Positions 1 to 26,727 of a stretch of 64,000 bases of DNA are shown one piece after another. Origin of the DNA: Macrostomum lignano (taxonomy: Eukaryota); the NCBI GenBank assembly GCA_002269645.1, contig NIVC01002325.1, positions 119,587 to 183,586 on the forward strand. Reading direction: 5' to 3'. How positions within the stretch are numbered: position 1 is the stretch's first letter; each line of letters opens with the position of its first letter. The notes beneath the pieces were generated by a model. That model did no database searches. It saw nothing but the letters and a program-made list of their open reading frames with translations, and had not been told where the DNA came from. Made by a program: the position numbers and the translations under genes.

Positions 1-212
1 ATCCTCGATACTTTACTGACAGATCCTCAATTCTCTACTGACAGATCCTCAATTCTCTACTGACAGATCCTCGATACTTTACTGACAGATCCTCAATTCT
101 CTACTGACAGATCCTCAATTCTCTACTGACAGATCCTCAATTCTTTACTGACAGATCCGCAGTTCTTTACTGACAGATCCTCAATTCTCTACTTACAGAT
201 CCTCAATTCTTT
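1..212. repeat. 22-bp tandem repeat (ATCCTCAATTCTCTACTGACAG)n
   Basis: About 10 units visible; mirror copy at 26461..26727. Confidence 0.95.
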
Positions 213-698
213 TCAGGGGAATCATCACCAGGCTCGGGGTGGGGGGGGGGTTGGCACACCCCCCTGACCCCTGGCTTCACTGGCGCTCGGTTATCTTCAA
301 CGAGAGCAAGCGAGCAGAAGTTCGAAAATAAATTTAGCTGCGGGTGCGGGCGAACTTCTCTTTTCTAACTCAAATACCCTTTTTGTGTACGAGAGACCCG
401 CAGCCGGTCTTTTTTGGGGCAGAGTTGCAAAGGCAGCTCGAGAATGAGTCAGAGAAACTTGCTTGTGGGTGAGACTCGTTAGAATGTCTCATTGATAATT
501 CTGTATAATGGGTAAGTCTGTATTCTGTGTTAGAGCGACTTATAAAATGAAGCTTAATGCGGATGGAATTGGTTGATTTAGAAGAATGTACAAAACTATG
601 AAATTAAAAATTCACTAAAACATGAGCATGGCGCTTTACATTGAGTTAAAAGTGACAAGATAAACGGGAAATCCCTTGAAAGCGGCAGGCAGCGCGGC

Positions 699-1361
699 TC
701 AGTAGTGATAGTCCAGCGGGTTGCGGTAGCCGTCGCCGTACATCCAGTTGGACGTTCGCTGCAGCCAGTGCTTTCGCCATTCGTATTCTCGCCGCTTGCC
801 CAGCCTCCGCTCCAACCCGCTGTCGAAGTAGCTGTACTCGCTGTCTTCGTAAACAGACGAGCTGGAGGTCCTCCTGCGCCTGCCAACCTCGAACAAGTCC
901 ACGTCCTTCTGGCGCAGGCTGAGCTCCTCCTCTCTCTGCTTCTCCTGCAGCTCCTCAGCTTCCAGACAGTCCGCCACCCACAGAGCTTGGTAGGTGCGGC
1001 TCTGCTCCCGCAGCAGAGCGAATTTGATGCCGATGAGGTGCCGCTCGCTGTTGCTCAGCTGCTGGGCTTCCCGCCTCTCCGCTGCGGCTGCCTCCTCTTC
1101 CACCGCTTCCTCCTCCGCGTTGTCGGCGCCGAACTCCTCCAGCTCGTCGTGGCTGGGCAGCCTCGGCAGGCTTTGCTGCGACGCCTCGTCACTGCCGGCG
1201 GTTCCGTCCAAGCTGTCGCGTCGCTGATCGTCGCTGCTGTAGCCGGAGTCGCTGCGAACCAGCCGGAGCTGCCGCAGCATCCTGGCGGTTGAGTCCGACA
1301 GCCGCCTCAGCCGAGAGCTCCGCCTGCCGTTCTCCTGACCTTGCTTCTCATGGCTGGACAT
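699..1361 (-). CDS. Hypothetical 220-aa protein, acidic/coiled-coil-like, with DSGYSS motif (left-arm copy)
   Basis: ATG-initiated ORF with GC-rich codon usage like the bona fide genes of the window; identical in both arms. No recognisable domain. Confidence 0.5.
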   Translation of the reverse strand: MSSHEKQGQENGRRSSRLRRLSDSTARMLRQLRLVRSDSGYSSDDQRRDSLDGTAGSDEASQQSLPRLPSHDELEEFGADNAEEEAVEEEAAAAERREAQQLSNSERHLIGIKFALLREQSRTYQALWVADCLEAEELQEKQREEELSLRQKDVDLFEVGRRRRTSSSSVYEDSEYSYFDSGLERRLGKRREYEWRKHWLQRTSNWMYGDGYRNPLDYHY

Positions 1362-1367
1362 TCCGGA

Positions 1368-1462
1368 TTGCCTGTGCTCTGCTGCCTGCGGTTGGGTGTC
1401 TGCTGTCTGCCTGCGGTTGGGTGTCTGCTGTCTGCCTGCGGTTGGCTGTCTGCTGTCTGCCT
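1368..1462. repeat. 24-bp tandem repeat (CTGCCTGCGGTTGGGTGTCTGCTG) upstream of the 220-aa ORF
   Basis: 3-4 units; mirrored near 25215..25300. Confidence 0.85.
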
Positions 1463-1564
1463 GCAGCCGGCATTCATTTTCTTGTTTTTATCGCTTAGCT
1501 GTGCGCAAGCGCACAAATAGGGAACTTGCCTAACAGACGGCACTATGCTGATGTCAAGTCTATT

Positions 1565-1652
<88 letters not shown>
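1565..1652. repeat. (CT)n microsatellite
   Basis: Direct reading; mirror (GA)n at 25026..25109 differs in length and interruptions. Confidence 0.97.
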
Positions 1653-1654
<2 letters not shown>

Positions 1655-3433
1655 CTGCTTTGTTCGCGCTCAGCACAATGTAGCTGGCCCAGTCATGGCA
1701 TTTTGGCAGCCGCTGTTGCACACAGGTGAATGCAGGACTGAAAAGTTGAGTCATCCGCCTGCACTAAACTCGAGCTGCGTGGGGCCGAGTTTGCTTTGGA
1801 TTATGACAGCTAGCTGACACAAGCAGCAAAAGTTCGGCTTTGTTCGAATGTAACCGTCAAAAGACTGCAGAAACTTATCATTTCATGAACTTTGCGAGTG
1901 AGACTTGCCTGCATGACAAAGAACTTCTTTGGTATCGCAGCTGTAAATCAAAGGCCGAACAAATTTGTCAATAATTTCAAAATAATTTGAGTTCAGCTTA
2001 TCAGCCTTTTTGAGTGTATTGAAAATCATCCTGAAAAAGATCGACGTTTTCCGTTCCGCTTCCAGCTCAGGCAGCTACAGAGGTCCTTGGTGTTACTATA
2101 AATAGCCTAGATCAGTAATTACGTGACAAGCGGAATCGAGAGTGGGCAGCACCATCCTGTTATTAGCTGACATTTTGGTGAAAAACAGGGACAACTAAAA
2201 CACTCATTTGGTATTTTATAAAGTTGTACTTTGGGTGAAAAATAGCACAAAAATTTTCGTTTTGTCTCCTCTCGGAGATTTTATGCACCTGACAGCTAGC
2301 TGCCACTCGGCTAGCGAATTTTTTGGACTAAAGACATGCATCAGTTTTATTCTCATCGTCTGCTTTCTGATCAAATTAAAGCAAATTTGTCAGCAATATT
2401 TGATTACTTAGATTATGACCAGATGGAAGCAAAAAAGTTTTTCTAAGACGTAGTCTGTAAGCACCGGCGATCTTGCACAGTTGCAGGGAAAGATTAAGTA
2501 TTACGCATGCAGAAGTACAGTATGAGCAGAAAATATCTAAACGGCATCCTGTGGTTCAAGTGCCGAATGCTGCAGGGCTTTAGTACTGAAAATTGTTGCA
2601 AATTTCCTGTGTTTAAATACATAGAAGAAACAGCGTAACTTCAGATGGATGTTGCTGTAGTACATGTTAGCTGCAGCTCAACAGATCATGATGGATTGGA
2701 GACTGCAGATTTGCCTATAACATGCGGACAAAGTAGGCTAAGAAATTTTGTACCTCCTATACATGTATCTACGTTCGTACCCAAATTATTAAGACTGATT
2801 TATACATTTTATAGTGGTAGCTCAAGCGAACGGTATCGCGGTTAAGTGCGGTATTTTAGTTTATTTGCAATAAAAAATGAGTGACATATAAGAAAGGGAT
2901 CATTGGGGGTGAGTAACAGTGGCTTGAGTCACTGTCAACCCAGACAGATAGCGCCCACACCCAGCCAGCAAGCTGAGGGAAGGAATTGGACGCCTCGACC
3001 AGGCTCGCACACCCCTGCAATGACCGCGACAATATCAATTTTATTAGATCCTTCAAACGGTCATTTACGTCATTTACAACGGACTGACAAAAATCGATTT
3101 AGGTGACAAGTAAAATTTATTTTCAACTTTGGTGGCCAATTTAAAACTGTCTTTGACACATATACTTGTCGAGGTCCTTAAGTCGTCCTATTTAAGTCGA
3201 TGACACATGCATGTAGCTTCAACCCGGCACACTTTTGATTTTTGCACTTGGTAAAAAATAAACAAAACAAAAAACAATTGATTACTTTTAATTTCCTCGG
3301 TTTCTTTTACAGGGCGATCTCGGACAGCTTTAACTGTTATTATAATTGACGCAAATCTTTCTAATAGATTTTGTCGAAAATAAAAGTCGCAGTTTCTTTT
3401 TTTCAAAAAGGTTGTTAAATTCGCTGAAAAAAT

Positions 3434-4126
3434 TTGCTAGCAAAATTTGCTAGCAACAGTGTGATATCATCAGAACTTGAGCTTACTCCAATCTCTCAAC
3501 GAATCGCTAAAACCTACCTCATCTATTGGCTGAAGATTAGACACAAAAAACTCTGCCAAACGACTCTAGAAATTTTCTACTCAAACACCGGCCAGAAAAA
3601 TCCATGGAAAATGAATGTACTAAAGAAACTGGAAAGTATAGACCTAAAAGCACTAACTGAAGATAAACTTTCCCAAAGCTTTAGTAACGAGAAATACCTA
3701 GTGAAAAAGCACCTCAAGATACACAGAGAAAGAGAACTTAGCCAAAAGCTAGAGAATCAGCAACATATTAAACTCTACAAAAACGCCTATCTCTACAAAA
3801 AAATCTGCAGGCCCGACCTTTCAGATTACTTTCCATGCACATTTAGAAACAAAAAATTCTTAACAACCCTCCTAAAACTGAAATGCGAGATTACACCCAA
3901 CTTTTTTTCTCAAGAACCATGTAAAATGTGTGGAGCGCAAAATGGTTCTGACATCCTGCACTACTTGACCGAATGTCCACAAACTGAAGAGATCAGGAAA
4001 AAATACTTCTGCCAATACCTCTTAAATGGCAATCAAATACACAAGATAGGATATGCTACAAATGAAAAAAGAGTCAGAAAAGAACTAACTGGTGTAGCTA
4101 AAATATTTGAAGTCATGAATAGCTAA
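3434..4126 (+). mobile_element. 5'-truncated non-LTR retrotransposon, ORF2 C-terminal region with CCHC-type knuckle
   Basis: 'SELELTPI..RI...YLIYWLKI' resembles the post-RT motif of LINEs; CKMC..x..HYLTEC knuckle. A-rich coding strand; starts at a TTG after a 13-bp duplication (AAAATTTGCTAGC x2). Confidence 0.7.
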
Positions 4127-5339
4127 AACAGTTAAACAAACTGACTCAGATACATCAGCAGTGTAACAAACCCGCTTTTCAGTCATTTATTCATTTACTG
4201 TCTTTTTTAATTTCCTATTTAAATCGTCGTTAATCGTTAGACGTTAAGTTCGTTCGAAGTATGTTTATGTTCGTTTTTCACGCTTTGATATATTACGCGC
4301 TTTCAAAAATACTACATGTCCTTTTACAAAAATCGCATAGTATTGAGAGCAATCCTTAATTATACTGATTATTTGTTATATTTGTTAAGATCTAACTACC
4401 TTTCCTGAATCGCATTCTAGAAGAATCGTTTTGCTTTAAGGTCCAGCCGTGTCCCACTCGTGAGGCCATTCTATCCTCGGAAAACACGGCCTTGCAGCCC
4501 AGTAATGAATGCAGCGGTGTAGCGCTGCATGTATTTCTGGCTTTATTTTACGTTGTATTTAATACATTTGCGCACGTATGCACCAGCCGGTTCTATAAGC
4601 CACCGTGGGTGATATTGGTAAACAAGTGTACAATTCAAATTGCATTTTAGCTAGCTATTAAAATAAGCCTGCCTATACATAAAATTTTACCACTTGCCAA
4701 TTAGTTAGGCTTAGATTTATTTATTGCTCTTTAGACTTTGGAATCATTTAAAATTTACATAACTATATCCTATTTTTTGTTTAGCCTAGGCAAAATGCAT
4801 ATTTAATAAGCTTTCTAGGCTTCTAAAATCTAATAGCAATAGATAAAAACTACCTACCTAGTAATTTTTTACCTAATAGTAATACAAAGCCAAGCCTTCT
4901 TTTGTGTTATAAAGCCTTTATGCTATGTTAGAATATGTTTTTTAATGATAATAAGATTAAGAATCTTTTTTTTCTTTGGATCTAAAATTCATTTGGTCCT
5001 TCTTTAATTTAAGTAGCTTAGGCCTATCTTTTTATAAGACCTAAGCCTAGCCTATGTTTATAATGTATTATATTAAAATGTTTTAATAATATTGTTTTAT
5101 GGAAATCAAAAGTAGGAATATAACTATATAAGATAAAGCATGCCTAAAAATAAAATAAAAATCTTTTTGAAATAATTAGCCATAGTCTAATCAACTATAG
5201 ACTAAGTAATAACTATTCATTGCCACTATATAAAGTCATGATATCCCTCTAGTTGTGACCTTTTCTTCCCCTCTAATGCTAGGCCTTACCTTTTTCTTTC
5301 TAGCCCATATTCTCTTCTCTAAAGCCTCACCTTCTTTTC

Positions 5340-7030
5340 CCTTCAGTATTACCCTCCTCCCCAGTCCCACAATGTTTTCCCATTAAATTCTTACCCTTTT
5401 TTCATAATCTCACCCTCTTACTCCTACCCTCTAGCCCCACCTTCCTAGCCTCTAGTCCCACTATCCTTCCCTCCAGCCCCACCCTCCTTCCCTCTAGCCC
5501 CGCCCTCCCTTCCAGCTTCCACCCTTTTCTCTCCTCTAGACCCATCCCTTCTCTCCAGCCCCACCCCTTCCTTCCAGCCCCACCCATTCCCTCCAGCCCT
5601 ATCTCTTCCCTCCAGCCCCTCCCCTTCCCTCCAGCCCCACCCCTTTCCTCTAGCCCCAACCCTCGCCTCCAGCTTCCACCCTCTTCTCCCCTCTAGCCTA
5701 ACCCTCCTACCCTCTAGCCCCACCCTCCTTCCCTCCAGCCCCACCCTCCTCTCTAGCCCCACCCTCCTTCCCTCCAGCCCCACCCTCCTACCCTCTAGCC
5801 CCACCCTCCTTCCCTCCAGCCCCACCCTCCTACCCTCTAGCCCCACCCTCCTTCCCTCCAGCCCCACCCTCCTACCCTCTAGCCCCTCTCCTTCCCTCCA
5901 GCCCCACCCCTTTCCTCTAGCCCCAACCCTCCCCTCCAGCTTCCACCCTCTTCTCCCCTCTAGCCCAACCCTCCTACCCTCTAGCCCCACCCTCCTACCC
6001 TCTAGCCCACCCTCCTTCCCTCCAGCCCCACCCTCCTACTCTCTAGCCCCACCCTCTTTCCCTCCAGCCCCACCCTCTTCTGTAGCCCCATCCCACCCCC
6101 TTCCCTCCAGCCCCACCCTCCTACCCTCTAGCCCTGCCCTCCCCTCCAGTTTCCAACCTCTTCTCCTTTCTAGCCCCACCCTCCCCTCCAGCTTCCACCC
6201 TCTTCTCCCTCCAGCCCCACCCTCCTACCCTCCAGCCCCACCCTCCCCTCCAGTTTCCAACCTCTTCTCCCCTCCAGCCTCACCCTCTTCTCCCCTCCAG
6301 CCCCACCCTCCTACCCTCTAGCCCCACCCTCCCCTCCAGCTTCCACCCTCTTCTCCCCTCCAGCCCCACCCTCCTTCCCTCCAGCCCCACCCTCCTACCC
6401 TCTAGCCCCACCCTCCTTCCCTCCAGCCCCACCCTCCTACCCTCTAGCCCCACCCTCCTTCCCTCCAGCCCCACCCTCCTACCCTCTAGCCCCTCTCCTT
6501 CCCTCCAGCCCCACCCCTTTCCTCTAGCCCCAACACTCCCCTCCAGCTTCCACCCTCTTCTCCCCTCTAGCCCAACCCTCCTACCCTCTAGCCCCACCCT
6601 CCCCTCCAGTTTCCAACCTCTTCTCCTTTCTAGCCCCACCCTCCCCTCCAGTTTCCAACCTCTTCTCCCCTCCAGCCTCACCCTCTTCTCCCCTCCAGCC
6701 CCACCCCCTTCCCTCCAGCCCCACCCTCCTACCCTCTAGCCCTGCCCTCCCTTCCAGCTTCCACCCTCTTCTCCCCTCCAGCCTTACCCTCCTTCCCTCC
6801 AGCCCCACCCTCCTACCCTCTAGCCCCACCCTCCTACCCTCTAGCCCTGCCCTCCCTTCCAGCTTCCAACCTCTTCTTCCCTCCAGCCTCACCCTCCTCC
6901 CCTCCAGACCCACCCCCTTCCCTCCAGCCCCACCCTCCTACCTTCTAGCCCCACCCTCCCCTCCAGCTTCCACCCTCTTCTCCCCTCCAGCCTCACCCTC
7001 TTCGCCTTTCTAGCCCCACCCTATTTTTCT
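5340..7030. repeat. Pyrimidine-rich minisatellite (~23-bp units, CTCCAGCCCCACCCTCCT..; G-rich on minus strand)
   Basis: Direct reading; mirror at ~19650..21340. Confidence 0.95.
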
Positions 7031-7120
7031 ATTCAGCCTCACCCTTTCTCGTAGCTCTGCTAATAAAATTTAATTATCCTTTTCAGAAGTGAAAAATAAT
7101 ATTTCTCTTTTCTCTCTTCA

Positions 7121-8010
7121 GAATGTCCTCGCACCGGTCTTGAGGTCATACCACGTGCCGGAGCGACTGGTCGCAGCAACCATAACTCTCTTCTAGGAGA
7201 CCCTGGCCGCCGTGGTGACACCTGACGGACTATCCGACCTGTTCAAAACGACCTCAGGGATGCTGCAAGGCGACACGCTTGCGTCCAACCGTTTCGTGTT
7301 GGTGCTCGATGGGGTGCTACGTAGGGCCCTGCCAAGGTGCTACGTAGGGCCCTGCCAACAGATGAGGACAGCTTCCTACTGTGCCGGCAAACAAGCAGCC
7401 GCCAATCGGAGAAGCGGCTGTCACTCATGGGTTACGCCGACGACCTGGCGCTGCCCGCCTCTACGGCTGAGGGAGCTCAGCGCATGCTAGACAGCCTGGT
7501 TGGTGGCAGCTGCGGCATCGGTCGGGCTAGCGGTGAACATCGAGAAGACGGAGGTGATGACTGTACCTGCGGAGCTGCCTATCAAAATCACCTGCTGGGA
7601 CACCCGACGGTCATGCAGCAGCTCTACCTCGCTGCGCGTGCTTCACGTACCCCGGCGATCTTGTGCCCAGTGTCCAGGAGGACTTGGCGCGACGCAGGGG
7701 CCTGGCCTGGGCGGCCTTCCGCTCCATCCGAGTCGTCCTGCAGAACGCCGCGCTGCCAGACTGCTGCGATCACCTAGCGAGACCCTCCGCAGGCGAAGAC
7801 ATCAGCTGGCGGGCCACACCATCCACGCGGAGGCCTACTGTTCTCAACCAGTGCAAGACGTCCTGCTGCTCACGATGCAGGGCCCCTGGCGCCGGGGCTA
7901 CGGCCGGGCGAGTCGCGTCGCGGATTGCCTGTTGGATGGCGCTGGGGTGATTGGCCAGGCGCACGCTGTTGCCGCCTTTAGAGAGCTCGCACTGAGAGAA
8001 CTGATCTGAC
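7121..8010 (+). mobile_element. Degenerate non-LTR retrotransposon reverse-transcriptase fragment (RTE-like)
   Basis: Motifs VTPDGLSDLF-TTSGMLQGDTLA, YADDL and VGLAVNIEKTEVM across frameshifts and stops; followed by DLARRRGLAWAAFRSI. Confidence 0.9.
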
Positions 8011-8596
8011 ATTGCCTCCCATTGTGAACTGTTACTTTTAACTCAACAATACTGGGTGTGCCTTGTTGTTATTTTCTCTTCAAAAAAATTTGCCTAGCTG
8101 CGAACTGTGATGGTGCATATCGCGTACTCGTGATTCAATAGCTTATACTTATTACTGTTTTACTTATTGCCTTCCGATGTCAATGCTATTTATTGCATGT
8201 AATATTATCGCAAAATTTAAGTTCGGGTGTCATTATTTAGCTACTGCCGCTGTTCTGCATTACAATTATTATAGTACTTCCTATCTACTGACGTAACATT
8301 GTACCAAAAATTTTACATTGCGTGGCGCCAAAACCAATCTTGTTGAATGCTACTAGCGTAATAGCCGTTTGAATCGCTTGAAATACATTGTAATGCCATG
8401 CTGTATTGCTTTTGACGATCTAAACGACACTGGCTAGACTTCACTGATCCATATGCTCCTCAAGCAAGGTATATGGAAAGCAGATTGAGCAGCAAACTTA
8501 GTGTTTGATTGATAGAGATATTGTATAGTTGGATCTTTGGATCACGGATAGAACCAAGGAATCTAGATCTGGAGGCATGGAGGCATGCGGGGGAGC

Positions 8597-9834
8597 CGCC
8601 GAAAGCAGCGGAGCTGTTGGGGGGAGCGGCGGAAAGCAGCGGAGCTGTTGGGGAGCGGCGGAAAGCAGCGGAGCTGTTGGGGGAGCGGCGGAAAGCAGCG
8701 GAGCTGTTGGGGGAGCGGCGGAAAGCAGCGGAGCTGTTGGGGGAGCGGCGGAAAGCAGCGGAGCTGTTGGGGGGAGCGGCGGAAAGCAGCGGAGCTGTTG
8801 GGGGAGCGGCGGAAAGAAGCGGAGCTATTGGTGGAAGTGGCGGAAAGCAGCGGAGCTGTTGGGGAGCGGCGGAAAGCAGCGGAGCTGTTGGGGGAGCGGC
8901 GGAAAGCAGCGGAGCTGTTGGGGGGAGCGGCGGAAAGCAGCGGAGCTGTTGGGGAGCGGCGGAAAGCAGCGGAGCTGTTGGGGGAGCGGCGGAAAGCAGC
9001 GGAGCTGTTGGGGGAGCGGCGGAAAGCAGCGGAGCTGTTGGGGGAGCGGCGGAAAGCAGCGGAGCTGTTGGGGAGCGGCGGAAAGCAGCGGAGCTGTTGG
9101 GGGAGCGGCGGAAAGCAGCGGAGCTGTTGGGGGGGGGAGCGGCGGAAAGCAGCGGAGCTGTTGGGGAGCGGCGGAAAGCAGCGGAGCTGTTGGGGGAGCG
9201 GCGGAAAGAAGCGGAGCTATTGGTGGAAGTGGCGGAAAGCAGCGGAGCTGTTGGGGAGCGGCGGAAAGCAGCGGAGCTGTTGGGGGAGCGGCGGAAAGCA
9301 GCGGAGCTGTTGGGGGGGGGAGCGGCGGAAAGCAGCGGAGCTGTTGGGGGAGCGGCGGAAAGCAGCGGAGCTGTTGGGGGAGCGGCGGAAAGCAGCGGAG
9401 CTGTTGGGGAGCGGCGGAAAGCAGCGGAGCTGTTGGGGAGCGGCGGAAAGCAGCGGAGCTGTTGGGGGAGCGGCGGAAAGCAGCGGAGCTGTTGGGGGGG
9501 GAGCGGCGGAAAGCAGCGGAGCTGTTGGGGGAGCGGCGGAAAGCAGCGGAGCTGTTGGGGGGGGAGCGGCGGAAAGCAGCGGAGCTGTTGGGGGAGCGGC
9601 GGAAAGCAGCGGAGCTGTTGGGGGAGCGGCGGAAAGCAGCGGAGCTGTTGGGGGAGCGGCGGAAAGCAGCGGAGCTGTTGGGGGAGCGGCGGAAAGCAGC
9701 GGAGCTGTTGGGGGGGGAGCGGCGGAAAGCAGCGGAGCTGTTGGGGGAGCGGCGGAAAGCAGCGGAGCTGTTGGGGAAGCGGCGGAAAGCAGCGGAGCTG
9801 TTGGGGGAGCGGCGGAAAGCAGCGGAGCTGTTGG
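8597..9834. repeat. G-run VNTR (GCGGCGGAAAGCAGCGGAGCTGTTGGGGGA, ~29-33 bp)
   Basis: About 1.24 kb array; the mirror at 17331..18082 is only about 0.75 kb. Confidence 0.97.
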
Positions 9835-10230
9835 TTTGATAACAGCTGACAGGCTTATTTGCATAGAGCGATGCTATGAGAATGAATTCAGTCAGTCAGT
9901 TTAAGGCAGAATGCTGGCTCTCTGCCTCTGCCTACCCTTCAACTGAATCGAGTGAACTCGCAGTGCCTGGAGTGCCCGAAGTTGGTTCTACATGTACGTA
10001 TGCATATTGTTTTGGCAAACTGGATTACAAAAAGGTACGGCTCATTTATTACAGTGTACTACATGTATTTGAGTGGCGAATTGGTGACGGTTTAAATGTT
10101 ACTAGGGCTACGTGTGTGTGACCCGGCCGGTGCTCTACTACCTTGAATTCATGCCCGTAAGGCTCAGCCTCCGATCATTTACTAATTATTTAATGTCGCG
10201 AGAGGGGACTCTCAGTCCCCAACATCCTGC

Positions 10231-13259: not shown

Positions 13260-13293
13260 CTGAACTGAACTGTTTTGACTGAACAATTTTTTT

Positions 13294-17330: not shown

Positions 17331-18082
17331 CCAACAGCTCCGCTGCTTTCCGCCGCTCCCCCAACAGCTCCGCTGCTTTCCGCCGCTCCCCCCAACAGCT
17401 CCGCTGCTTTCCGCCGCTCCCCAACAGCTCCGCTGCTTTCCGCCGCTCCCCAACAGCTCCGCTGCTTTCCGCCACTTCCACCAATAGCTCCGCTTCTTTC
17501 CGCCGCTCCCCCCCAACAGCTCCGCTGCTTTCCGCCGCTCCCCAACAGCTCCGCTGCTTTCCGCCGCTCCCCCCCCCAACAGCTCCGCTGCTTTCCGCCG
17601 CTCCCCCAACAGCTCCGCTGCTTTCCGCCGCTCCCCAACAGCTCCGCTGCTTTCCGCCACTTCCACCAATAGCTCCGCTTCTTTCCACCGCTCCCCCCCC
17701 CAACAGCTCCGCTGCTTTCCGCCGCTCCCCCAACAGCTCCGCTGCTTTCCGCCGCTCCCCAACAGCTCCGCTGCTTTCCGCCGCTCCCCCCAACAGCTCC
17801 GCTGCTTTCCGCCGCTCCCCCAACAGCTCCGCTGCTTTCCGCCGCTCCCCAACAGCTCCGCTGCTTTCCGCCACTTCCACCAATAGCTCCGCTTCTTTCC
17901 GCCGCTCCCCCAACAGCTCCGCTGCTTTCCGCCGCTCCCCCCAACAGCTCCGCTGCTTTCCGCCGCTCCCCCAACAGCTCCGCTGCTTTCCGCCGCTCCC
18001 CCCAACAGCTCCGCTGCTTTCCGCCGCTCCCCCAACAGCTCCGCTGCTTTCCGCCGCTCCCCCCAACAGCTCCGCTGCTTTC
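17331..18082. repeat. Mirror of the G-run VNTR, shorter allele
   Basis: Direct reading. Confidence 0.97.
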
Positions 18083-18672
18083 GGCGGCTCCCCCCGCATG
18101 CCTCCATGCCTCCAGATCTAGATTCCTTGGTTCTATCCGTGATCCAAAGATCCAACTATACAATATCTCTATCAATCAAACACTAAGTTTGCTGCTCAAT
18201 CTGCTTTCCATATACCTTGCTTGAGGAGCATATGGATCAGTGAAGTCTAGCCAGTGTCGTTTAGATCGTCAAAAGCAATACTGCATGGCATTACAATGTA
18301 TTTCAAGCGATTCAAACGGCTATTACGCTAGTAGCATTCAACAAGATTGGTTTTGGCGCCACGCAATGTAAAATTTTTGGTACAATGTTACGTCAGTAGA
18401 TAGGAAGTACTATAATAATTGTAATGCAGAACAGCGGCAGTAGCTAAATAATGACACCCGAACTTAAATTTTGCGATAATATTACATGCAATAAATAGCA
18501 TTGACATCGGAAGGCAATAAGTAAAACAGTAATAAGTATAAGCTATTGAATCGCGAGTACGCGATATGCACCATCACAGTTCGCAGCTAGGCAAATTTTT
18601 TGAAGAGAAAATAACAACAAGGCACACCCAGTATTGTTGAGTTAAAAGTAACAGTTCACAATGGGAGGCAAT

Positions 18673-19562
18673 GTCAGATCAGTTCTCTCAGTGCGAGCTC
18701 TCTAAAGGCGGCAACAGCGTGCGCCTGGCCAATCACCCCAGCGCCATCCAACAGGCAATCCGCGACGCGACTCGCCCGGCCGTAGCCCCGGCGCCAGGGG
18801 CCCTGCATCGTGAGCAGCAGGACGTCTTGCACTGGTTGAGAACAGTAGGCCTCCGCGTGGATGGTGTGGCCCGCCAGCTGATGTCTTCGCCTGCGGAGGG
18901 TCTCGCTAGGTGATCGCAGCAGTCTGGCAGCGCGGCGTTCTGCAGGACGACTCGGATGGAGCGGAAGGCCGCCCAGGCCAGGCCCCTGCGTCGCGCCAAG
19001 TCCTCCTGGACACTGGGCACAAGATCGCCGGGGTACGTGAAGCACGCGCAGCGAGGTAGAGCTGCTGCATGACCGTCGGGTGTCCCAGCAGGTGATTTTG
19101 ATAGGCAGCTCCGCAGGTACAGTCATCACCTCCGTCTTCTCGATGTTCACCGCTAGCCCGACCGATGCCGCAGCTGCCACCAACCAGGCTGTCTAGCATG
19201 CGCTGAGCTCCCTCAGCCCCAGAGAGCGGGCAGCGCCAGGTCGTCGGCGTAACCCATGAGTGACAGCCGCTTCTCCGATTGGCGGCTGCTTGTTTGCCGG
19301 CACAGTAGGAAGCTGTCCTCATCTGTTGGCAGGGCCCTACGTAGCACCTTGGCAGGGCCCTACGTAGCACCCCATCGAGCACCAACACGAAACGGTTGGA
19401 CGCAAGCGTGTCGCCTTGCAGCATCCCTGAGGTCGTTTTGAACAGGTCGGATAGTCCGTCAGGTGTCACCACGGCGGCCAGGGTCTCCTAGAAGAGAGTT
19501 ATGGTTGCTGCGACCAGTCGCTCCGGCACGTGGTATGACCTCAAGACCGGTGCGAGGACATT
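18673..19562 (-). mobile_element. Mirror copy of the RTE-like RT fragment
   Basis: Reverse complement of 7121..8010 with a small indel near the YADD region. Confidence 0.9.
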
Positions 19563-19649
19563 CTGAAGAGAGAAAAGAGAAATATTATTTTTCACTTCTG
19601 AAAAGGATAATTAAATTTTATTAGCAGAGCTACGAGAAAGGGTGAGGCT

Positions 19650-21340
19650 GAATAGGAAAATAGGGTGGGGCTAGAAGGCGAAGAGGGTGAGGCTGGAGGG
19701 GAGAAGAGGGTGGAAGCTGGAGGGGAGGGTGGGGCTAGAAGGTAGGAGGGTGGGGCTGGAGGGAAGGGGGTGGGTCTGGAGGGGAGGAGGGTGAGGCTGG
19801 AGGGAAGAAGAGGTTGGAAGCTGGAAGGGAGGGCAGGGCTAGAGGGTAGGAGGGTGGGGCTAGAGGGTAGGAGGGTGGGGCTGGAGGGTAGGAGGGTAAG
19901 GCTGGAGGGGAGAAGAGGGTGGAAGCTGGAAGGGAGGGCAGGGCTAGAGGGTAGGAGGGTGGGGCTGGAGGGAAGGGGTGGGGCTGGAGGGGAGAAGAGG
20001 GTGAGGCTGGAGGGGAGAAGAGGTTGGAAACTGGAGGGGAGGGTGGGGCTAGAAAGGAGAAGAGGTTGGAAACTGGAGGGGAGGGTGGGGCTAGAGGGTA
20101 GGAGGGTTGGGCTAGAGGGAGAAGAGGGTGGAAGCTGGAGGGGAGTGTTGGGGCTAGAGGAAAGGGGTGGGGCTGGAGGGAAGGAGAGGGGCTAGAGGGT
20201 AGGAGGGTGGGGCTGGAGGGAAGGAGGGTGGGGCTAGAGGGTAGGAGGGTGGGGCTGGAGGGAAGGAGGGTGGGGCTAGAGGGTAGGAGGGTGGGGCTGG
20301 AGGGAAGGAGGGTGGGGCTGGAGGGGAGAAGAGGGTGGAAGCTGGAGGGAGGGTGGGGCTAGAGGGTAGGAGGGTGGGGCTGGAGGGGAGAAGAGGGTGA
20401 GGCTGGAGGGGAGAAGAGGTTGGAAACTGGAGGGGAGGGTGGGGCTGGAGGGTAGGAGGGTGGGGCTGGAGGGAGAAGAGGGTGGAAGCTGGAGGGGAGG
20501 GTGGGGCTAGAAAGGAGAAGAGGTTGGAAACTGGAGGGGAGGGCAGGGCTAGAGGGTAGGAGGGTGGGGCTGGAGGGAAGGGGTGGGGTGGGGCTACAGA
20601 AGAGGGTGGGGCTGGAGGGAAAGAGGGTGGGGCTAGAGAGTAGGAGGGTGGGGCTGGAGGGAAGGAGGGTGGGGCTAGAGGGTAGGAGGGTGGGGCTAGA
20701 GGGTAGGAGGGTTGGGCTAGAGGGAGAAGAGGGTGGAAGCTGGAGGGGAGGGTTGGGGCTAGAGGAAAGGGGTGGGGCTGGAGGGAAGGAGAGGGGCTAG
20801 AGGGTAGGAGGGTGGGGCTGGAGGGAAGGAGGGTGGGGCTAGAGGGTAGGAGGGTGGGGCTGGAGGGAAGGAGGGTGGGGCTAGAGGGTAGGAGGGTGGG
20901 GCTGGAGGGAAGGAGGGTGGGGCTAGAGAGGAGGGTGGGGCTGGAGGGAAGGAGGGTGGGGCTAGAGGGTAGGAGGGTTGGCTAGAGGGGAGAAGAGGGT
21001 GGAAGCTGGAGGGAGGGTTGGGGCTAGAGGAAAGGGGTGGGGCTGGAGGGAAGGGGAGGGGCTGGAGGGAAGAGATAGGGCTGGAGGGAATGGGTGGGGC
21101 TGGAAGGAAGGGGTGGGGCTGGAGAGAAGGGATGGGTCTAGAGGAGAGAAAAGGGTGGAAGCTGGAAGGGAGGGCGGGGCTAGAGGGAAGGAGGGTGGGG
21201 CTGGAGGGAAGGATAGTGGGACTAGAGGCTAGGAAGGTGGGGCTAGAGGGTAGGAGTAAGAGGGTGAGATTATGAAAAAAGGGTAAGAATTTAATGGGAA
21301 AACATTGTGGGACTGGGGAGGAGGGTAATACTGAAGGGAA
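19650..21340. repeat. Purine-rich minisatellite (mirror of 5340..7030)
   Basis: Direct reading. Confidence 0.95.
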
Positions 21341-22551
21341 AAGAAGGTGAGGCTTTAGAGAAGAGAATATGGGCTAGAAAGAAAAAGGTAAGGCCTAGCA
21401 TTAGAGGGGAAGAAAAGGTCACAACTAGAGGGATATCATGACTTTATATAGTGGCAATGAATAGTTATTACTTAGTCTATAGTTGATTAGACTATGGCTA
21501 ATTATTTCAAAAAGATTTTTATTTTATTTTTAGGCATGCTTTATCTTATATAGTTATATTCCTACTTTTGATTTCCATAAAACAATATTATTAAAACATT
21601 TTAATATAATACATTATAAACATAGGCTAGGCTTAGGTCTTATAAAAAGATAGGCCTAAGCTACTTAAATTAAAGAAGGACCAAATGAATTTTAGATCCA
21701 AAGAAAAAAAAGATTCTTAATCTTATTATCATTAAAAAAACATATTCTAACATAGCATAAAGGCTTTATAACACAAAAGAAGGCTTGGCTTTGTATTACT
21801 ATTAGGTAAAAAATTACTAGGTAGGTAGTTTTTATCTATTGCTATTAGATTTTAGAAGCCTAGAAAGCTTATTAAATATGCATTTTGCCTAGGCTAAACA
21901 AAAAATAGGATATAGTTATGTAAATTTTAAATGATTCCAAAGTCTAAAGAGCAATAAATAAATCTAAGCCTAACTAATTGGCAAGTGGTAAAATTTTATG
22001 TATAGGCAGGCTTATTTTAATAGCTAGCTAAAATGCAATTTGAATTGTACACTTGTTTACCAATATCACCCACGGTGGCTTATAGAACCGGCTGGTGCAT
22101 ACGTGCGCAAATGTATTAAATACAACGTAAAATAAAGCCAGAAATACATGCAGCGCTACACCGCTGCATTCATTACTGGGCTGCAAGGCCGTGTTTTCCG
22201 AGGATAGAATGGCCTCACGAGTGGGACACGGCTGGACCTTAAAGCAAAACGATTCTTCTAGAATGCGATTCAGGAAAGGTAGTTAGATCTTAACAAATAT
22301 AACAAATAATCAGTATAATTAAGGATTGCTCTCAATACTATGCGATTTTTGTAAAAGGACATGTAGTATTTTTGAAAGCGCGTAATATATCAAAGCGTGA
22401 AAAACGAACATAAACATACTTCGAACGAACTTAACGTCTAACGATTAACGACGATTTAAATAGGAAATTAAAAAAGACAGTAAATGAATAAATGACTGAA
22501 AAGCGGGTTTGTTACACTGCTGATGTATCTGAGTCAGTTTGTTTAACTGTT

Positions 22552-23244
22552 TTAGCTATTCATGACTTCAAATATTTTAGCTACACCAGTTAGTTCTTTT
22601 CTGACTCTTTTTTCATTTGTAGCATATCCTATCTTGTGTATTTGATTGCCATTTAAGAGGTATTGGCAGAAGTATTTTTTCCTGATCTCTTCAGTTTGTG
22701 GACATTCGGTCAAGTAGTGCAGGATGTCAGAACCATTTTGCGCTCCACACATTTTACATGGTTCTTGAGAAAAAAAGTTGGGTGTAATCTCGCATTTCAG
22801 TTTTAGGAGGGTTGTTAAGAATTTTTTGTTTCTAAATGTGCATGGAAAGTAATCTGAAAGGTCGGGCCTGCAGATTTTTTTGTAGAGATAGGCGTTTTTG
22901 TAGAGTTTAATATGTTGCTGATTCTCTAGCTTTTGGCTAAGTTCTCTTTCTCTGTGTATCTTGAGGTGCTTTTTCACTAGGTATTTCTCGTTACTAAAGC
23001 TTTGGGAAAGTTTATCTTCAGTTAGTGCTTTTAGGTCTATACTTTCCAGTTTCTTTAGTACATTCATTTTCCATGGATTTTTCTGGCCGGTGTTTGAGTA
23101 GAAAATTTCTAGAGTCGTTTGGCAGAGTTTTTTGTGTCTAATCTTCAGCCAATAGATGAGGTAGGTTTTAGCGATTCGTTGAGAGATTGGAGTAAGCTCA
23201 AGTTCTGATGATATCACACTGTTGCTAGCAAATTTTGCTAGCAA
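22552..23244 (-). mobile_element. Mirror copy of the LINE ORF2 C-terminal fragment
   Basis: Identical 230-aa ORF. Confidence 0.7.
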
Positions 23245-25023
23245 ATTTTTTCAGCGAATTTAACAACCTTTTTGAAAAAAAGAAACTGCGACTTTTATTT
23301 TCGACAAAATCTATTAGAAAGATTTGCGTCAATTATAATAACAGTTAAAGCTGTCCGAGATCGCCCTGTAAAAGAAACCGAGGAAATTAAAAGTAATCAA
23401 TTGTTTTTTGTTTTGTTTATTTTTTACCAAGTGCAAAAATCAAAAGTGTGCCGGGTTGAAGCTACATGCATGTGTCATCGACTTAAATAGGACGACTTAA
23501 GGACCTCGACAAGTATATGTGTCAAAGACAGTTTTAAATTGGCCACCAAAGTTGAAAATAAATTTTACTTGTCACCTAAATCGATTTTTGTCAGTCCGTT
23601 GTAAATGACGTAAATGACCGTTTGAAGGATCTAATAAAATTGATATTGTCGCGGTCATTGCAGGGGTGTGCGAGCCTGGTCGAGGCGTCCAATTCCTTCC
23701 CTCAGCTTGCTGGCTGGGTGTGGGCGCTATCTGTCTGGGTTGACAGTGACTCAAGCCACTGTTACTCACCCCCAATGATCCCTTTCTTATATGTCACTCA
23801 TTTTTTATTGCAAATAAACTAAAATACCGCACTTAACCGCGATACCGTTCGCTTGAGCTACCACTATAAAATGTATAAATCAGTCTTAATAATTTGGGTA
23901 CGAACGTAGATACATGTATAGGAGGTACAAAATTTCTTAGCCTACTTTGTCCGCATGTTATAGGCAAATCTGCAGTCTCCAATCCATCATGATCTGTTGA
24001 GCTGCAGCTAACATGTACTACAGCAACATGCATCTGAAGTTACGCTGTTTCTTCTATGTATTTAAACACAGGAAATTTGCAACAATTTTCAGTACTAAAG
24101 CCCTGCAGCATTCGGCACTTGAACCACAGGATGCCGTTTAGATATTTTCTGCTCATACTGTACTTCTGCATGCGTAATACTTAATCTTTCCCTGCAACTG
24201 TGCAAGATCGCCGGTGCTTACAGACTACGTCTTAGAAAAACTTTTTTGCTTCCATCTGGTCATAATCTAAGTAATCAAATATTGCTGACAAATTTGCTTT
24301 AATTTGATCAGAAAGCAGACGATGAGAATAAAACTGATGCATGTCTTTAGTCCAAAAAATTCGCTAGCCGAGTGGCAGCTAGCTGTCAGGTGCATAAAAT
24401 CTCCGAGAGGAGACAAAACGAAAATTTTTGTGCTATTTTTCACCCAAAGTACAACTTTATAAAATACCAAATGAGTGTTTTAGTTGTCCCTGTTTTTCAC
24501 CAAAATGTCAGCTAATAACAGGATGGTGCTGCCCACTCTCGATTCCGCTTGTCACGTAATTACTGATCTAGGCTATTTATAGTAACACCAAGGACCTCTG
24601 TAGCTGCCTGAGCTGGAAGCGGAACGGAAAACGTCGATCTTTTTCAGGATGATTTTCAATACACTCAAAAAGGCTGATAAGCTGAACTCAAATTATTTTG
24701 AAATTATTGACAAATTTGTTCGGCCTTTGATTTACAGCTGCGATACCAAAGAAGTTCTTTGTCATGCAGGCAAGTCTCACTCGCAAAGTTCATGAAATGA
24801 TAAGTTTCTGCAGTCTTTTGACGGTTACATTCGAACAAAGCCGAACTTTTGCTGCTTGTGTCAGCTAGCTGTCATAATCCAAAGCAAACTCGGCCCCACG
24901 CAGCTCGAGTTTAGTGCAGGCGGATGACTCAACTTTTCAGTCCTGCATTCACCTGTGTGCAACAGCGGCTGCCAAAATGCCATGACTGGGCCAGCTACAT
25001 TGTGCTGAGCGCGAACAAAGCAG

Positions 25024-25109
<86 letters not shown>

Positions 25110-25312
25110 AATAGACTTGACATCAGCATAGTGCCGTCTGTTAGGCAAGTTCCCTATTTGTGCGCTTGCGCACAGCTAAGCGATAAAAACAAGAAAATGA
25201 ATGCCGGCTGCAGGCAGACAGCAGACAGCCAACCGCAGGCAGACAGCAGACACCCAACCGCAGGCAGACAGCAGACACCCAACCGCAGGCAGCAGAGCAC
25301 AGGCAATCCGGA

Positions 25313-25975
25313 ATGTCCAGCCATGAGAAGCAAGGTCAGGAGAACGGCAGGCGGAGCTCTCGGCTGAGGCGGCTGTCGGACTCAACCGCCAGGATGCTGC
25401 GGCAGCTCCGGCTGGTTCGCAGCGACTCCGGCTACAGCAGCGACGATCAGCGACGCGACAGCTTGGACGGAACCGCCGGCAGTGACGAGGCGTCGCAGCA
25501 AAGCCTGCCGAGGCTGCCCAGCCACGACGAGCTGGAGGAGTTCGGCGCCGACAACGCGGAGGAGGAAGCGGTGGAAGAGGAGGCAGCCGCAGCGGAGAGG
25601 CGGGAAGCCCAGCAGCTGAGCAACAGCGAGCGGCACCTCATCGGCATCAAATTCGCTCTGCTGCGGGAGCAGAGCCGCACCTACCAAGCTCTGTGGGTGG
25701 CGGACTGTCTGGAAGCTGAGGAGCTGCAGGAGAAGCAGAGAGAGGAGGAGCTCAGCCTGCGCCAGAAGGACGTGGACTTGTTCGAGGTTGGCAGGCGCAG
25801 GAGGACCTCCAGCTCGTCTGTTTACGAAGACAGCGAGTACAGCTACTTCGACAGCGGGTTGGAGCGGAGGCTGGGCAAGCGGCGAGAATACGAATGGCGA
25901 AAGCACTGGCTGCAGCGAACGTCCAACTGGATGTACGGCGACGGCTACCGCAACCCGCTGGACTATCACTACTGA
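25313..25975 (+). CDS. Hypothetical 220-aa protein (right-arm copy)
   Basis: Same protein sequence as 699..1361. Confidence 0.5.
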   Translation: MSSHEKQGQENGRRSSRLRRLSDSTARMLRQLRLVRSDSGYSSDDQRRDSLDGTAGSDEASQQSLPRLPSHDELEEFGADNAEEEAVEEEAAAAERREAQQLSNSERHLIGIKFALLREQSRTYQALWVADCLEAEELQEKQREEELSLRQKDVDLFEVGRRRRTSSSSVYEDSEYSYFDSGLERRLGKRREYEWRKHWLQRTSNWMYGDGYRNPLDYHY

Positions 25976-26460
25976 GCCGCGCTGCCTGCCGCTTTCAAGG
26001 GATTTCCCGTTTATCTTGTCACTTTTAACTCAATGTAAAGCGCCATGCTCATGTTTTAGTGAATTTTTAATTTCATAGTTTTGTACATTCTTCTAAATCA
26101 ACCAATTCCATCCGCATTAAGCTTCATTTTATAAGTCGCTCTAACACAGAATACAGACTTACCCATTATACAGAATTATCAATGAGACATTCTAACGAGT
26201 CTCACCCACAAGCAAGTTTCTCTGACTCATTCTCGAGCTGCCTTTGCAACTCTGCCCCAAAAAAGACCGGCTGCGGGTCTCTCGTACACAAAAAGGGTAT
26301 TTGAGTTAGAAAAGAGAAGTTCGCCCGCACCCGCAGCTAAATTTATTTTCGAACTTCTGCTCGCTTGCTCTCGTTGAAGATAACCGAGCGCCAGTGAAGC
26401 CAGGGGTCAGGGGGGTGTGCCAACCCCCCCCCCACCCCGAGCCTGGTGATGATTCCCCTG

Positions 26461-26727
26461 AAAAGAATTGAGGATCTGTAAGTAGAGAATTGAGGATCTG
26501 TCAGTAAAGAACTGCGGATCTGTCAGTAAAGAATTGAGGATCTGTCAGTAGAGAATTGAGGATCTGTCAGTAAAGTATCGAGGATCTGTCAGTAGAGAAT
26601 TGAGGATCTGTCAGTAGAGAATTGAGGATCTGTCAGTAAAGTATCGAGGATCTGTCAGTAGAGAATTGAAGATCTGTCAGTAGAGAATTGAGGATCTGTC
26701 AGTAAAGAATTGAAGATCTGTCAGTAT
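26461..26727. repeat. 22-bp tandem repeat at the outer end of the right arm
   Basis: (CTGTCAGTAGAGAATTGAGGAT)n, about 12 units. Confidence 0.95.

What the first reader, a model, noticed from the sequence alone, without database searches (positions are those of the whole stretch)
1..26651. Giant (>26 kb) near-perfect inverted duplication with a 3.2-kb spacer
Seen: the arms 1..13614 and 16784..~26651 are reverse complements. Unique sequence differs only by scattered SNPs and indels, while VNTR lengths differ and one arm has a retrotransposon. Inference: this is a real fold-back-type segmental duplication (breakage-fusion-bridge or template switch), possibly homogenised by arm-to-arm gene conversion. 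A read-through hairpin transcript could yield dsRNA/siRNA against the LINE remnants in the arms. The alternative is two haplotypes joined head-to-head by the assembler.
Basis: partly seen in the sequence, partly recalled or inferred. Interest (0 to 1): 0.7.

Follow-up and report, generated by a model that had tools for sequence, protein, structure and literature searches.

The report
Giant inverted repeat, flatworm contig end
The last 64 kb of a published Macrostomum lignano (flatworm) contig folds back on itself over at least 79 kb, but the two arms behave like two of the genome's three known homologous copies, so most of the "palindrome" is probably an assembly join around, at most, a smaller real inverted repeat.

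Summary
The inverted repeat is in the sequence, but it is far larger than reported. The window is exactly the last 64,000 bp of contig NIVC01002325.1 of the Macrostomum lignano Mlig_3_7 assembly (Canu, PacBio CLR). The apparent outer end at about 26.65 kb is only the window edge. With sequence fetched to the left of the window, the arms run at least 36,986 bp (left) and 39,063 bp (right, window 16784-55846) around the 3,169-bp spacer. Divergence is a mosaic: 0-0.1% at 18-28 kb and 47-56 kb, and 3.4-5.8% at 36-39 and 42-47 kb. About a quarter of the length lies in large indels. Every arm gene checked has two or three annotated copies in the assembly and no fourth: left arm, right arm and, for three of the four, one on another contig. 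This is the published S/L1/L2 three-copy norm for this neopolyploid, and mean arm divergence (1.3%) matches L1-L2 divergence. The best reading (about 0.5) is a genuine fold-back-type junction at the core, with most of the mirrored sequence being two homologous chromosome copies joined by the assembler. A fully real giant palindrome (about 0.2) and a fully artefactual join (about 0.25) remain open. Only reads can decide.

The parts
1..10237 (.). Left arm, the part visible in the window. It continues at least 23,371 bp to the left of the window, to record position 96215.
   Evidence: Reverse complement of 26673-16925. The continuation comes from loci L002 and L005.
699..1460 (-). Left copy of the 253-aa arm gene (protein P0002; the 220-aa ORF is 699-1361). 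It is transcribed away from the centre.
   Evidence: P0002 is annotated twice on this contig in opposite orientations. No Pfam domain.
5421..7022 (.). 21-bp minisatellite, about 77 copies. Its mirror lies at 19662-21256.
   Evidence: Tandem Repeats Finder.
7200..8010 (+). Degraded, frame-shifted reverse-transcriptase remnant. Its mirror lies at about 18670-19470.
   Evidence: RVT_1 at E = 6e-6 and 26.5 bits, below the 29.6 cut-off, and only after frames were joined by hand. The single ORFs give no hit.
8589..9834 (.). 30-bp minisatellite with 41 copies. Its mirror at 17331-18094 has 25 copies.
10238..13509 (+). Ty3/gypsy-type pol fragment (end of protease, RT, RNase H, integrase), present only in the left arm. 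It has no LTRs and no target-site duplication.
   Evidence: Pfam RVT_1, RT_RNaseH, rve and Integrase_H2C2. No direct repeat in 9800-17400. Junction sequences.
13510..13614 (.). Innermost 105 bp of the left arm, 100% complementary to 16784-16888.
13615..16783 (.). Spacer: 3,169 bp, 38% G+C, not self-complementary. Both ends carry a short AT-rich inverted microhomology.
   Evidence: Only a 38-bp internal inverted repeat. Composition and junction sequences.
16021..16512 (+). Remnant of a mariner/Tc1-like DDE transposase inside the spacer.
   Evidence: Weak DDE_3 hit, E = 0.026. The motif '...HDNASSH...LPHPTYSLDLSPCDF' resembles mariner transposases (own knowledge).
16784..16888 (.). Innermost 105 bp of the right arm.
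16889..16925 (.). 37 bp that stand in the right arm where the left arm has the gypsy fragment.
16926..26673 (.). Right arm, mirror of the visible left arm. Divergence is 0-0.4% per kb beyond the VNTR.
25214..25975 (+). Right copy of the 253-aa arm gene, transcribed away from the centre.
   Evidence: locus L003.
26674..55846 (.). Continuation of the right arm, mirrored by record positions 119586-96215 to the left of the window. It holds CD20-like genes, the GRWD1-like gene and a 6.3-kb satellite.
   Evidence: Per-kb divergence.
29345..35637 (.). 18-bp satellite, 6.3 kb in the right arm and about 0.3 kb in the left arm. This is the largest structural difference between the arms.
36347..37660 (-). 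GRWD1-like WD40 gene (main ORF) inside a block where the arms differ by 3-4%. Both arm copies are annotated as full length (457 and 458 aa).
   Evidence: Pfam CAF1C_H4-bd and WD40. Gene tables. Three-way distances.
55847..64000 (.). The last 8.2 kb before the contig end. Whether it is also mirrored could not be tested, because the left side beyond record 96215 was not obtainable.
   Evidence: No annotated gene gave access, and the exact look-ups failed.

Best explanation
The window is the 3' end of Canu contig NIVC01002325.1 of the M. lignano DV1 assembly Mlig_3_7. One gene-bearing block lies there head-to-head with its own homologue around a 3.2-kb spacer. I read it as a hybrid. (a) The inverted junction at the core comes from a real DNA molecule. 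It is a fold-back or template-switch type join, in which synthesis running to window 16783 resumed on the complementary strand at the position equivalent to 13614. That gives a genuine inverted repeat of unknown length, from about 1 kb up to roughly 11.6 kb, where the near-identical block ends at about 28.4 kb. (b) Most of the 37-39 kb mirrored on each side is not a duplication on one chromosome. It is two of the three homologous copies that this neopolyploid carries for most loci, most likely the L1 and L2 variants of the large chromosome MLI1. Inside the near-identical repeat the assembler could not tell right-arm reads from reverse-complemented left-arm reads. It then left the right arm into the other copy's outer flank and ran on to the contig end. 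Shown: the geometry, the source contig, the copy count, the divergence mosaic and the structural differences. Inferred: the reality of the junction, the assembler switch, and the assignment to L1 and L2.
For: Source and extent: the window matches NIVC01002325.1:119587-183586 exactly, and the arms were traced to record 96215 and window 55846. Why the junction came from a real molecule: there are no Ns in the window or in loci L001-L006, so this is a contig, not a scaffold join. The spacer is not self-complementary. The arms differ by a 3,272-vs-37-bp replacement 105 bp from the spacer and by VNTR lengths. A missed-adapter or same-molecule chimera would not produce any of this. Why the arms look like homologous copies rather than an extra duplicate: the 253-aa gene and two CD20-like genes each have exactly three annotated copies, namely left arm, right arm and NIVC01000140.1. 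A third CD20-like gene has only the two arm copies. None has a fourth. In Mlig_3_7, 69.6% of the assembly lies in 3-copy S/L1/L2 blocks, and L1 and L2 are heterozygous MLI1 homologues (PMC10733133). Arm divergence is 412 substitutions in 31.7 kb, or 1.3%, against 1.39-1.91% published for L1-L2. In the divergent GRWD1 block the three copies are nearly equidistant: 3.3%, 4.0% and 4.8%. About a quarter of the arm length is in large indels, against about 32% published for L1-L2 pairs. The same paper reports that 36% of the assembly length lies in S/L-chimeric scaffolds and that L1/L2 chimerism went unmeasured. The right arm was followed to within 8 kb of the contig end. False duplication of diverged haplotypes is a common error of CLR assemblies (PMC8081667).
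Against: No read, depth or k-mer dosage data could be examined, so neither the junction nor the proposed switch point is demonstrated. The copy count rests on annotated proteins, not on a DNA search of the whole assembly. The third copy is 4-8% diverged from the arms, about two to three times the published L-S mean of 2.41%. The trio is therefore not a textbook S/L1/L2 set. The 0% blocks also occur far from the centre (47-56 kb), so there is no single clean step in divergence to mark a switch point. Published false heterotype duplications are usually tandem or at gaps, not inverted inside a gapless contig.
Confidence: 0.5

Rival explanations
1. Fully real giant palindrome. An inverted segmental duplication of at least 79 kb exists in cis on one chromosome. 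It would have been made by fold-back or breakage-fusion-bridge type repair at a post-polyploidy rearrangement breakpoint. Arm-to-arm gene conversion would create the 0% tracts, and unconverted tracts would retain 3-6% divergence.
For: The contig is gapless and the arms are structurally distinct. Both arms break colinearity with the third copy at the same base, window 3429/23249, and share about 6.8 kb of TE/VNTR sequence inward of it. The third copy's inward neighbour, a TAFH gene, is single-copy in the protein collection. This fits loss of the distal side, as expected after a fold-back at a break. Sharp transitions between 0% and about 5% divergence are what conversion tracts look like. A 3.2-kb spacer with AT-rich inverted microhomology at its ends fits fold-back priming.
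Against: A cis duplicate on top of S, L1 and L2 predicts four or five copies of each arm gene. Only three are annotated, which requires L1 and L2 to be identical or collapsed here. That holds for roughly 15% of the assembly (PMC10733133). Mean divergence, indel load and near-equidistance of the three copies all match ordinary L1-L2 homologues without needing a palindrome. No outer boundary with unique flanks was found, and the right arm runs towards the contig end.
Confidence: 0.22
2. Complete assembly artefact. No multi-kilobase inverted repeat exists in the genome. The L1 and L2 copies were joined head-to-head through one chimeric fold-back molecule, with its subreads supporting each other, or through a 3.4-kb segment that is inverted between the two homologues and flanked by the 105-bp repeat.
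For: The copy-number, divergence and contig-end evidence is the same as for the best explanation. Mlig_3_7 is known to be highly chimeric between subgenomes. A single junction joining position f on one strand to position e on the other, with f - e = 3.2 kb, is enough to create the whole picture, so no coincidence is needed. The perfect 105-bp repeat lies directly next to an allelic structural difference.
Against: From my own knowledge of the assembler, Canu's overlap-based trimming splits reads at junctions that other reads do not span, and it screens specifically for hairpin subreads. Fold-back molecules with a 3.2-kb loop should be very rare in native-DNA SMRTbell libraries. A 105-bp repeat is below Canu's minimum overlap. 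At 130x coverage (PMC5730564), reads spanning a 3.4-kb segment should resolve its true flanks.
Confidence: 0.23

Closest known systems
Large genomic palindromes with spacers, for example the ampliconic palindromes P1-P8 of the human Y chromosome (own knowledge)
   Same: Two gene-bearing inverted arms of tens of kilobases lie around a spacer of a few kilobases. Long tracts are essentially identical, which in those palindromes is explained by arm-to-arm gene conversion.
   Different: Here identity is a mosaic of 0% and 3-6% blocks, and about a quarter of the arm length is in large indels. Linkage of the arms in cis is unproven. The total copy number does not show an extra copy.
Fold-back inversions, meaning inverted duplications with a short single-copy spacer, produced by breakage-fusion-bridge cycles or replication template switching (own knowledge)
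   Same: There is a single inverted junction with a kilobase-scale spacer. Short inverted microhomology sits at the spacer ends. The ancestral neighbour on the far side is apparently absent.
   Different: No ancestral, unduplicated copy of the spacer region is available to show the microhomology that would have been used. Loss of the distal segment is inferred only from annotation. The event, if real, may involve only the inner few kilobases.
Heterotype false duplications in long-read assemblies, where both haplotypes are retained in the primary assembly (PMC8081667)
   Same: The two copies differ by the haplotype-level divergence. They occur in a heterozygous, repeat-rich genome assembled from CLR reads. 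One copy sits at a contig end. The assembly is known to be about 1.5 times the expected size.
   Different: The described cases are separate contigs or tandem copies next to gaps. This one is inverted, lies inside a gapless contig, and has a unique spacer.
Palindromic chimeric reads from SMRTbell templates whose hairpin adapter was missed (own knowledge)
   Same: Reverse-complement arms in PacBio-derived sequence.
   Different: Those reads have no spacer, or only the adapter, and their arms come from one molecule. Here the spacer is 3,169 bp of genomic sequence, and the arms differ by kilobase-scale indels.

Membership tests
Genuine cis palindrome (inverted segmental duplication) | Two long arms that are reverse complements of each other | tested here: met
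   Arms of at least 36,986 and 39,063 bp.
Genuine cis palindrome (inverted segmental duplication) | Both arms lie on one DNA molecule, shown by single reads or maps that span the spacer and both arms | not testable with these tools
   No reads, optical maps or independent assemblies were accessible. Only the one Canu contig shows the linkage.
Genuine cis palindrome (inverted segmental duplication) | One more copy in the genome than the number of homologous chromosome sets predicts | tested here: not met
   Two or three annotated copies per arm gene and no fourth: three for the 253-aa gene and two CD20-like genes, two for another. The norm for this assembly is three (PMC10733133). Caveat: the count is annotation-based, and collapsed copies cannot be excluded.
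Genuine cis palindrome (inverted segmental duplication) | Defined outer boundaries with different unique flanks on the two sides | tested here: inconclusive
   The mirror still holds at 99.6% at the last comparable base (window 55846). The remaining 8.2 kb to the contig end could not be compared.
Heterotype false duplication (two haplotypes or homeologues in one sequence) | Divergence between the copies equals the known haplotype or subgenome divergence | tested here: met
   1.3% substitutions overall against 1.39-1.91% for L1-L2. In the GRWD1 block the distances are 3.3% arm-to-arm and 4.0-4.8% to the third copy.
Heterotype false duplication (two haplotypes or homeologues in one sequence) | Each copy at haplotype (half) read depth, with copy-specific variants at haplotype dosage | not testable with these tools
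   Needs the DV1 PacBio reads and the DV1_8 and DV1_10 Illumina reads.
Heterotype false duplication (two haplotypes or homeologues in one sequence) | The duplicate abuts a contig end or gap | tested here: inconclusive
   The window ends at the contig end (record 183586 of 183586). The right arm was traced only to 8.2 kb from it. Whether the mirror reaches the end could not be tested.
Missed-adapter SMRTbell chimera | Arms meet without genomic spacer and are identical apart from read errors | tested here: not met
   The spacer is 3,169 bp and non-palindromic. There is a 3,272-vs-37-bp replacement, and VNTR lengths differ.
Fold-back inversion from a broken end (BFB type) | Loss of the sequence distal to the junction | tested here: inconclusive
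   The third copy's inward genes (TAFH/TAF4-like, TAF13-like) have no homologue in the window, and the TAFH gene is single-copy in the protein collection. Unannotated copies elsewhere cannot be excluded.
Ty3/gypsy LTR retrotransposon (left-arm-only segment) | RT, RNase H and integrase domains in pol order | tested here: met
   RVT_1 1.8e-8, RT_RNaseH 1.2e-35, Integrase_H2C2 3.8e-12, rve 1.9e-15.
Ty3/gypsy LTR retrotransposon (left-arm-only segment) | Flanking LTRs and a target-site duplication, which mark an insertion by retrotransposition | tested here: not met
   No direct repeat in 9800-17400. The junctions show no duplication, and the segment replaces 37 bp.

The most novel reading that the evidence does not exclude
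The whole structure of at least 79 kb is a genuine palindrome on chromosome MLI1. It would have been created by fold-back (breakage-fusion-bridge type) repair at a rearrangement breakpoint that arose after the whole-genome duplication, and it would be partly homogenised by arm-to-arm gene conversion. It would carry duplicated, apparently intact genes: GRWD1-like, several CD20-like genes and the 253-aa ORF. It would be a sequence-level footprint of the chromosome instability that built the large chromosome of M. lignano.
Probability: 0.2. Interest if true: 0.6.

Novelty: new member of a known kind. Interest (0 to 1): 0.3.

Why it matters
If the core junction is real, it is an ordinary but datable fold-back rearrangement. 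It lies where the large-chromosome copies lose colinearity with the third copy, which is useful for reconstructing how chromosome MLI1 was rearranged after genome duplication. If the giant form is real, it would be one of few gene-bearing autosomal palindromes described outside vertebrate sex chromosomes. The more likely practical value is a warning. Mlig_3_7 was still the assembly used in a December 2025 study (PMC12801592). This contig probably strings two homologous chromosome copies together in opposite orientation, which would mislead gene-copy counts, knock-out design, synteny and small-RNA mapping at this locus.

Tried and rejected
(1) Rfam scan of the whole window found nothing.

(2) Exact-protein look-ups were run to find the source or other assemblies. 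The 220-aa, 230-aa, 163-aa, 248-aa and 169-aa ORFs were not on record. Ten further ORFs from 53-64 kb were not in the collection. As a result the left side beyond record 96215 could not be fetched, and the last 8.2 kb of the window could not be compared.

(4) I searched the third copy (NIVC01000140.1) for the spacer or inner-arm sequence. There is no homology inward of window 23249 in about 14 kb, so it cannot show the ancestral, unduplicated state of the centre.

(5) I looked for a source of the 37-bp filler, which would indicate a templated insertion. None exists in the DNA held (the first attempt timed out).

(6) I considered that the spacer plus the 105-bp repeats might be a DNA transposon with terminal inverted repeats. 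Only a remnant of about 350 bp of a mariner-like transposase is present. No target-site duplication can be checked, so this is neither shown nor excluded.

(7) A missed-adapter chimera and an SSPACE scaffolding join were rejected. The first fails on the spacer and the unequal arms, the second on the absence of Ns.

(8) A literature search for palindromes in M. lignano found nothing relevant.

(9) The hairpin-transcript/siRNA idea has no annotated transcript near or across the spacer, and no small-RNA data were available.

Full report
WHAT IS THERE

The reported inverted repeat is real in the sequence. Window 1-10237 is the reverse complement of 26673-16925. One BLAST segment, 1-9347 vs 26673-17331, has 98.98% identity over 9,373 columns. 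A global alignment finds 39 differences. Of these, 26 lie in three minisatellites. Only 7 substitutions and 6 small indels fall in the roughly 7.2 kb of unique sequence.

Next to the spacer, a perfect 105-bp stretch (13510-13614 vs 16888-16784) is separated from the rest of the arms by a replacement. The left arm has 3,272 bp (10238-13509) where the right arm has 37 bp (16889-16925). The 3,272 bp encode the end of a protease plus RT, RNase H and integrase of a Ty3/gypsy-type element. They have no LTRs and no target-site duplication. This is therefore an internal fragment, not a clean retrotransposition.

The spacer (13615-16783) is 3,169 bp long with 38% G+C. It is not self-complementary and holds a short remnant of a mariner-like transposase. 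The 'LINE remnants' in the arms are a degraded RT. It reaches RVT_1 at E = 6e-6, below Pfam's cut-off, and only after I joined frames by hand.

WHERE IT COMES FROM, AND ITS TRUE SIZE

A 220-aa ORF in the arms is 95% identical to a Macrostomum lignano protein. A 253-aa member of the same cluster contains the ORF exactly. That member is annotated twice, in opposite orientations, on contig NIVC01002325.1 (183,586 bp) of assembly Mlig_3_7, GCA_002269645.1. String comparison shows that the window is exactly positions 119587-183586, the last 64 kb of that contig.

The end of the right arm at about 26.65 kb in the finding is therefore only the mirror image of the window's left edge. Sequence fetched to the left of the window (loci L002 and L005) mirrors window 26652-55846. 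The arms are at least 36,986 bp (record 96215-133200) and 39,063 bp (window 16784-55846), and the whole structure is at least 79 kb. The last 8.2 kb of the window could not be compared, because no annotated gene gave access to the contig left of 96215. There are no Ns anywhere, so the join lies inside a Canu contig and is not a scaffolding join.

HOW THE ARMS COMPARE

Per-kb divergence is a sharp mosaic.
- 0-0.1% at 18-28.4 kb and 47-55.8 kb.
- 0.3-0.7% at 39-41 kb.
- 3.4-5.8% at 36-39 kb (the GRWD1-like gene) and 42-47 kb.

Overall there are 412 substitutions in 31.7 kb, or 1.3%, leaving out the satellite. The large differences are the gypsy fragment (3.3 kb, left only), an 18-bp satellite (6.3 kb right vs about 0.3 kb left) and several minisatellites. 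Together they make up about a quarter of the arm length.

THE CONTEXT THAT CHANGES THE READING

Mlig_3_7 was made with Canu 1.4 from PacBio CLR reads of the inbred DV1 line, polished with Pilon and scaffolded with SSPACE (PMC5730564). Zadesenets et al. (PMC10733133) report the following.
- 69.6% of this assembly consists of 3-copy paralogous blocks that correspond to three subgenomes.
- S lies on the small chromosomes. L1 and L2 are two diverged, permanently heterozygous copies of the large chromosome MLI1.
- SNP divergence is 1.39-1.91% for L1-L2 and 2.41% for L-S.
- About 32% of L1-L2 alignments lie in long insertions.
- 36% of the assembly length lies in S/L-chimeric scaffolds, and L1/L2 chimerism was not measurable.

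Here, the 253-aa gene and two CD20-like genes each have exactly three annotated copies: left arm, right arm and one on NIVC01000140.1. Another CD20-like gene has only the two arm copies. No gene has a fourth. The third copy is colinear with window 23249-38109 at 87-92% identity. In the divergent GRWD1 block the three copies are nearly equidistant: arms 3.3%, arms to third copy 4.0% and 4.8%. So the copy number, the mean divergence and the indel load of the two 'arms' are what two ordinary homologous copies show in this genome. A duplicate in cis on top of S, L1 and L2 would predict four or five copies.

WHAT CANNOT BE AN ARTEFACT SO EASILY

A missed-adapter read gives a spacer-less palindrome with identical arms. 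Here the spacer is 3.2 kb of unique sequence and the arms differ structurally right next to it. The whole picture needs one junction that joins position 16783 on one strand to the position equivalent to 13614 on the other. Such a junction must have existed in at least one sequenced molecule.

From my own knowledge of the assembler, Canu trims reads at junctions that other reads do not span. It needs overlaps far longer than the 105-bp repeat. At 130x coverage, reads spanning a 3.4-kb segment are abundant. I therefore consider the junction more likely genuine than not, at roughly 75%. Its ends carry a short AT-rich inverted microhomology, and ATACATGTAT at the left junction is a perfect 10-bp palindrome. 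This is compatible with fold-back priming but is not strong evidence.

SYNTHESIS

Three readings remain.

H3, my best at about 0.5: there is a real inverted repeat at the core, with true arms of between about 1 kb and about 11.6 kb. Inside its near-identical sequence the assembler switched from the right arm into the reverse complement of the other homologue's outer flank. The outer 25 kb or more per side are then L1 and L2 alleles, not a duplication.

H1, about 0.22: the whole palindrome is real. It would have been made by fold-back repair at the point where both arms lose colinearity with the third copy (window 3429/23249). The third copy's inward neighbours, a TAFH/TAF4-like gene and a TAF13-like gene, have no counterpart in the window, and the TAFH gene is single-copy in the protein collection. 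Gene conversion would then explain the 0% tracts. This reading needs L1 and L2 to be collapsed or identical here.

H2, about 0.23: nothing but a chimeric molecule, or a small inverted segment, joined L1 and L2.

The sequence alone cannot separate these three. The 0% blocks occur both next to the centre and 30 kb away, so there is no single step in divergence to mark a switch point. The third copy is two to three times more diverged than the published L-S mean, so the trio is not a textbook one.

Arm-to-arm gene conversion is possible but not required. A read-through hairpin transcript has no support. No gene is annotated within about 8.4 kb of the spacer on the right, or about 8.8 kb from the left arm's break at 10237 (about 12.2 kb from the spacer edge). 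The nearest genes, the two 253-aa ORFs, point away from the centre.

VERDICT

Biologically this is at most an ordinary member of a known kind, an inverted duplication or palindrome. The giant form is more likely an assembly construct of two homologous chromosome copies. The main value is as a caution for users of this reference. The decisive tests are read mapping across 16783/16784, dosage of arm-specific SNPs in DV1_8 and DV1_10, and junction PCR. All of them use data and lines that already exist.

Noticed in passing
window 29345-35637 (left-arm counterpart at record about 116.6 kb, locus L005 about 20375-20660): An 18-bp satellite (TTTGTGAATGATGCTCAA) spans 6.3 kb in the right arm, with a higher-order periodicity of about 1.6 kb. 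The left arm has only about 0.3 kb of it. This is the largest length difference between the arms.
   Followed up: partly
window 27816-28778(+), 41132-42307(-), 45154-46260(-), 47043-48044(-), 61390-62464(-), 63357-63933(-): A tandem family of CD20/MS4A-like four-transmembrane genes whose C-terminal tails are encoded by minisatellites ((P/A)GYPGQQ repeats). The two copies nearest the contig end are split across reading frames, so they are either pseudogenes or carry uncorrected CLR indel errors.
   Followed up: partly
L001 3523-4719 and L006 10001-21197 (NIVC01000140.1:529461-550657): In the third copy, the arm homology is followed inward by a TAFH/TAF4-like gene and a TAF13-like gene. The TAFH gene has no second copy in the protein collection, although most genes of this assembly have three. 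Both arms lose colinearity with this copy at the same base, window 3429/23249.
   Followed up: partly
window 13608-13620 and 16760-16794: The spacer ends carry a short AT-rich inverted microhomology: ...AATACATG|TATATCAT on the left and, reverse-complemented, ...AATACATG|CTGTATATATAG on the right. ATACATGTAT at the left junction is a perfect 10-bp palindrome.
   Followed up: no
window 10238-13509 vs 16889-16925: An LTR-less internal fragment of a gypsy-type pol replaces 37 bp of the other arm. It has no target-site duplication, and no source for the 37 bp was found. This looks like break repair with captured or deleted DNA rather than transposition.
   Followed up: partly
window 35842-36480 and 36347-37660: The GRWD1-like WD40 gene ends in a coding minisatellite (SGSASPT repeats). 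It lies in one of the most divergent blocks between the arms (3-4%), yet both copies are annotated as full length (457 and 458 aa).
   Followed up: partly
window 42468-43160, 44003-44560, 48175-49266, 53929-54699, 56438-58184, 59378-60034: Minisatellite arrays are unusually dense. Unit sizes include about 29 bp at 48175-49266 and about 40 bp at 44003-44560, read off the BLAST offsets. Many arrays are open in several reading frames, so the long ORFs listed there are repeat artefacts, not genes.
   Followed up: no
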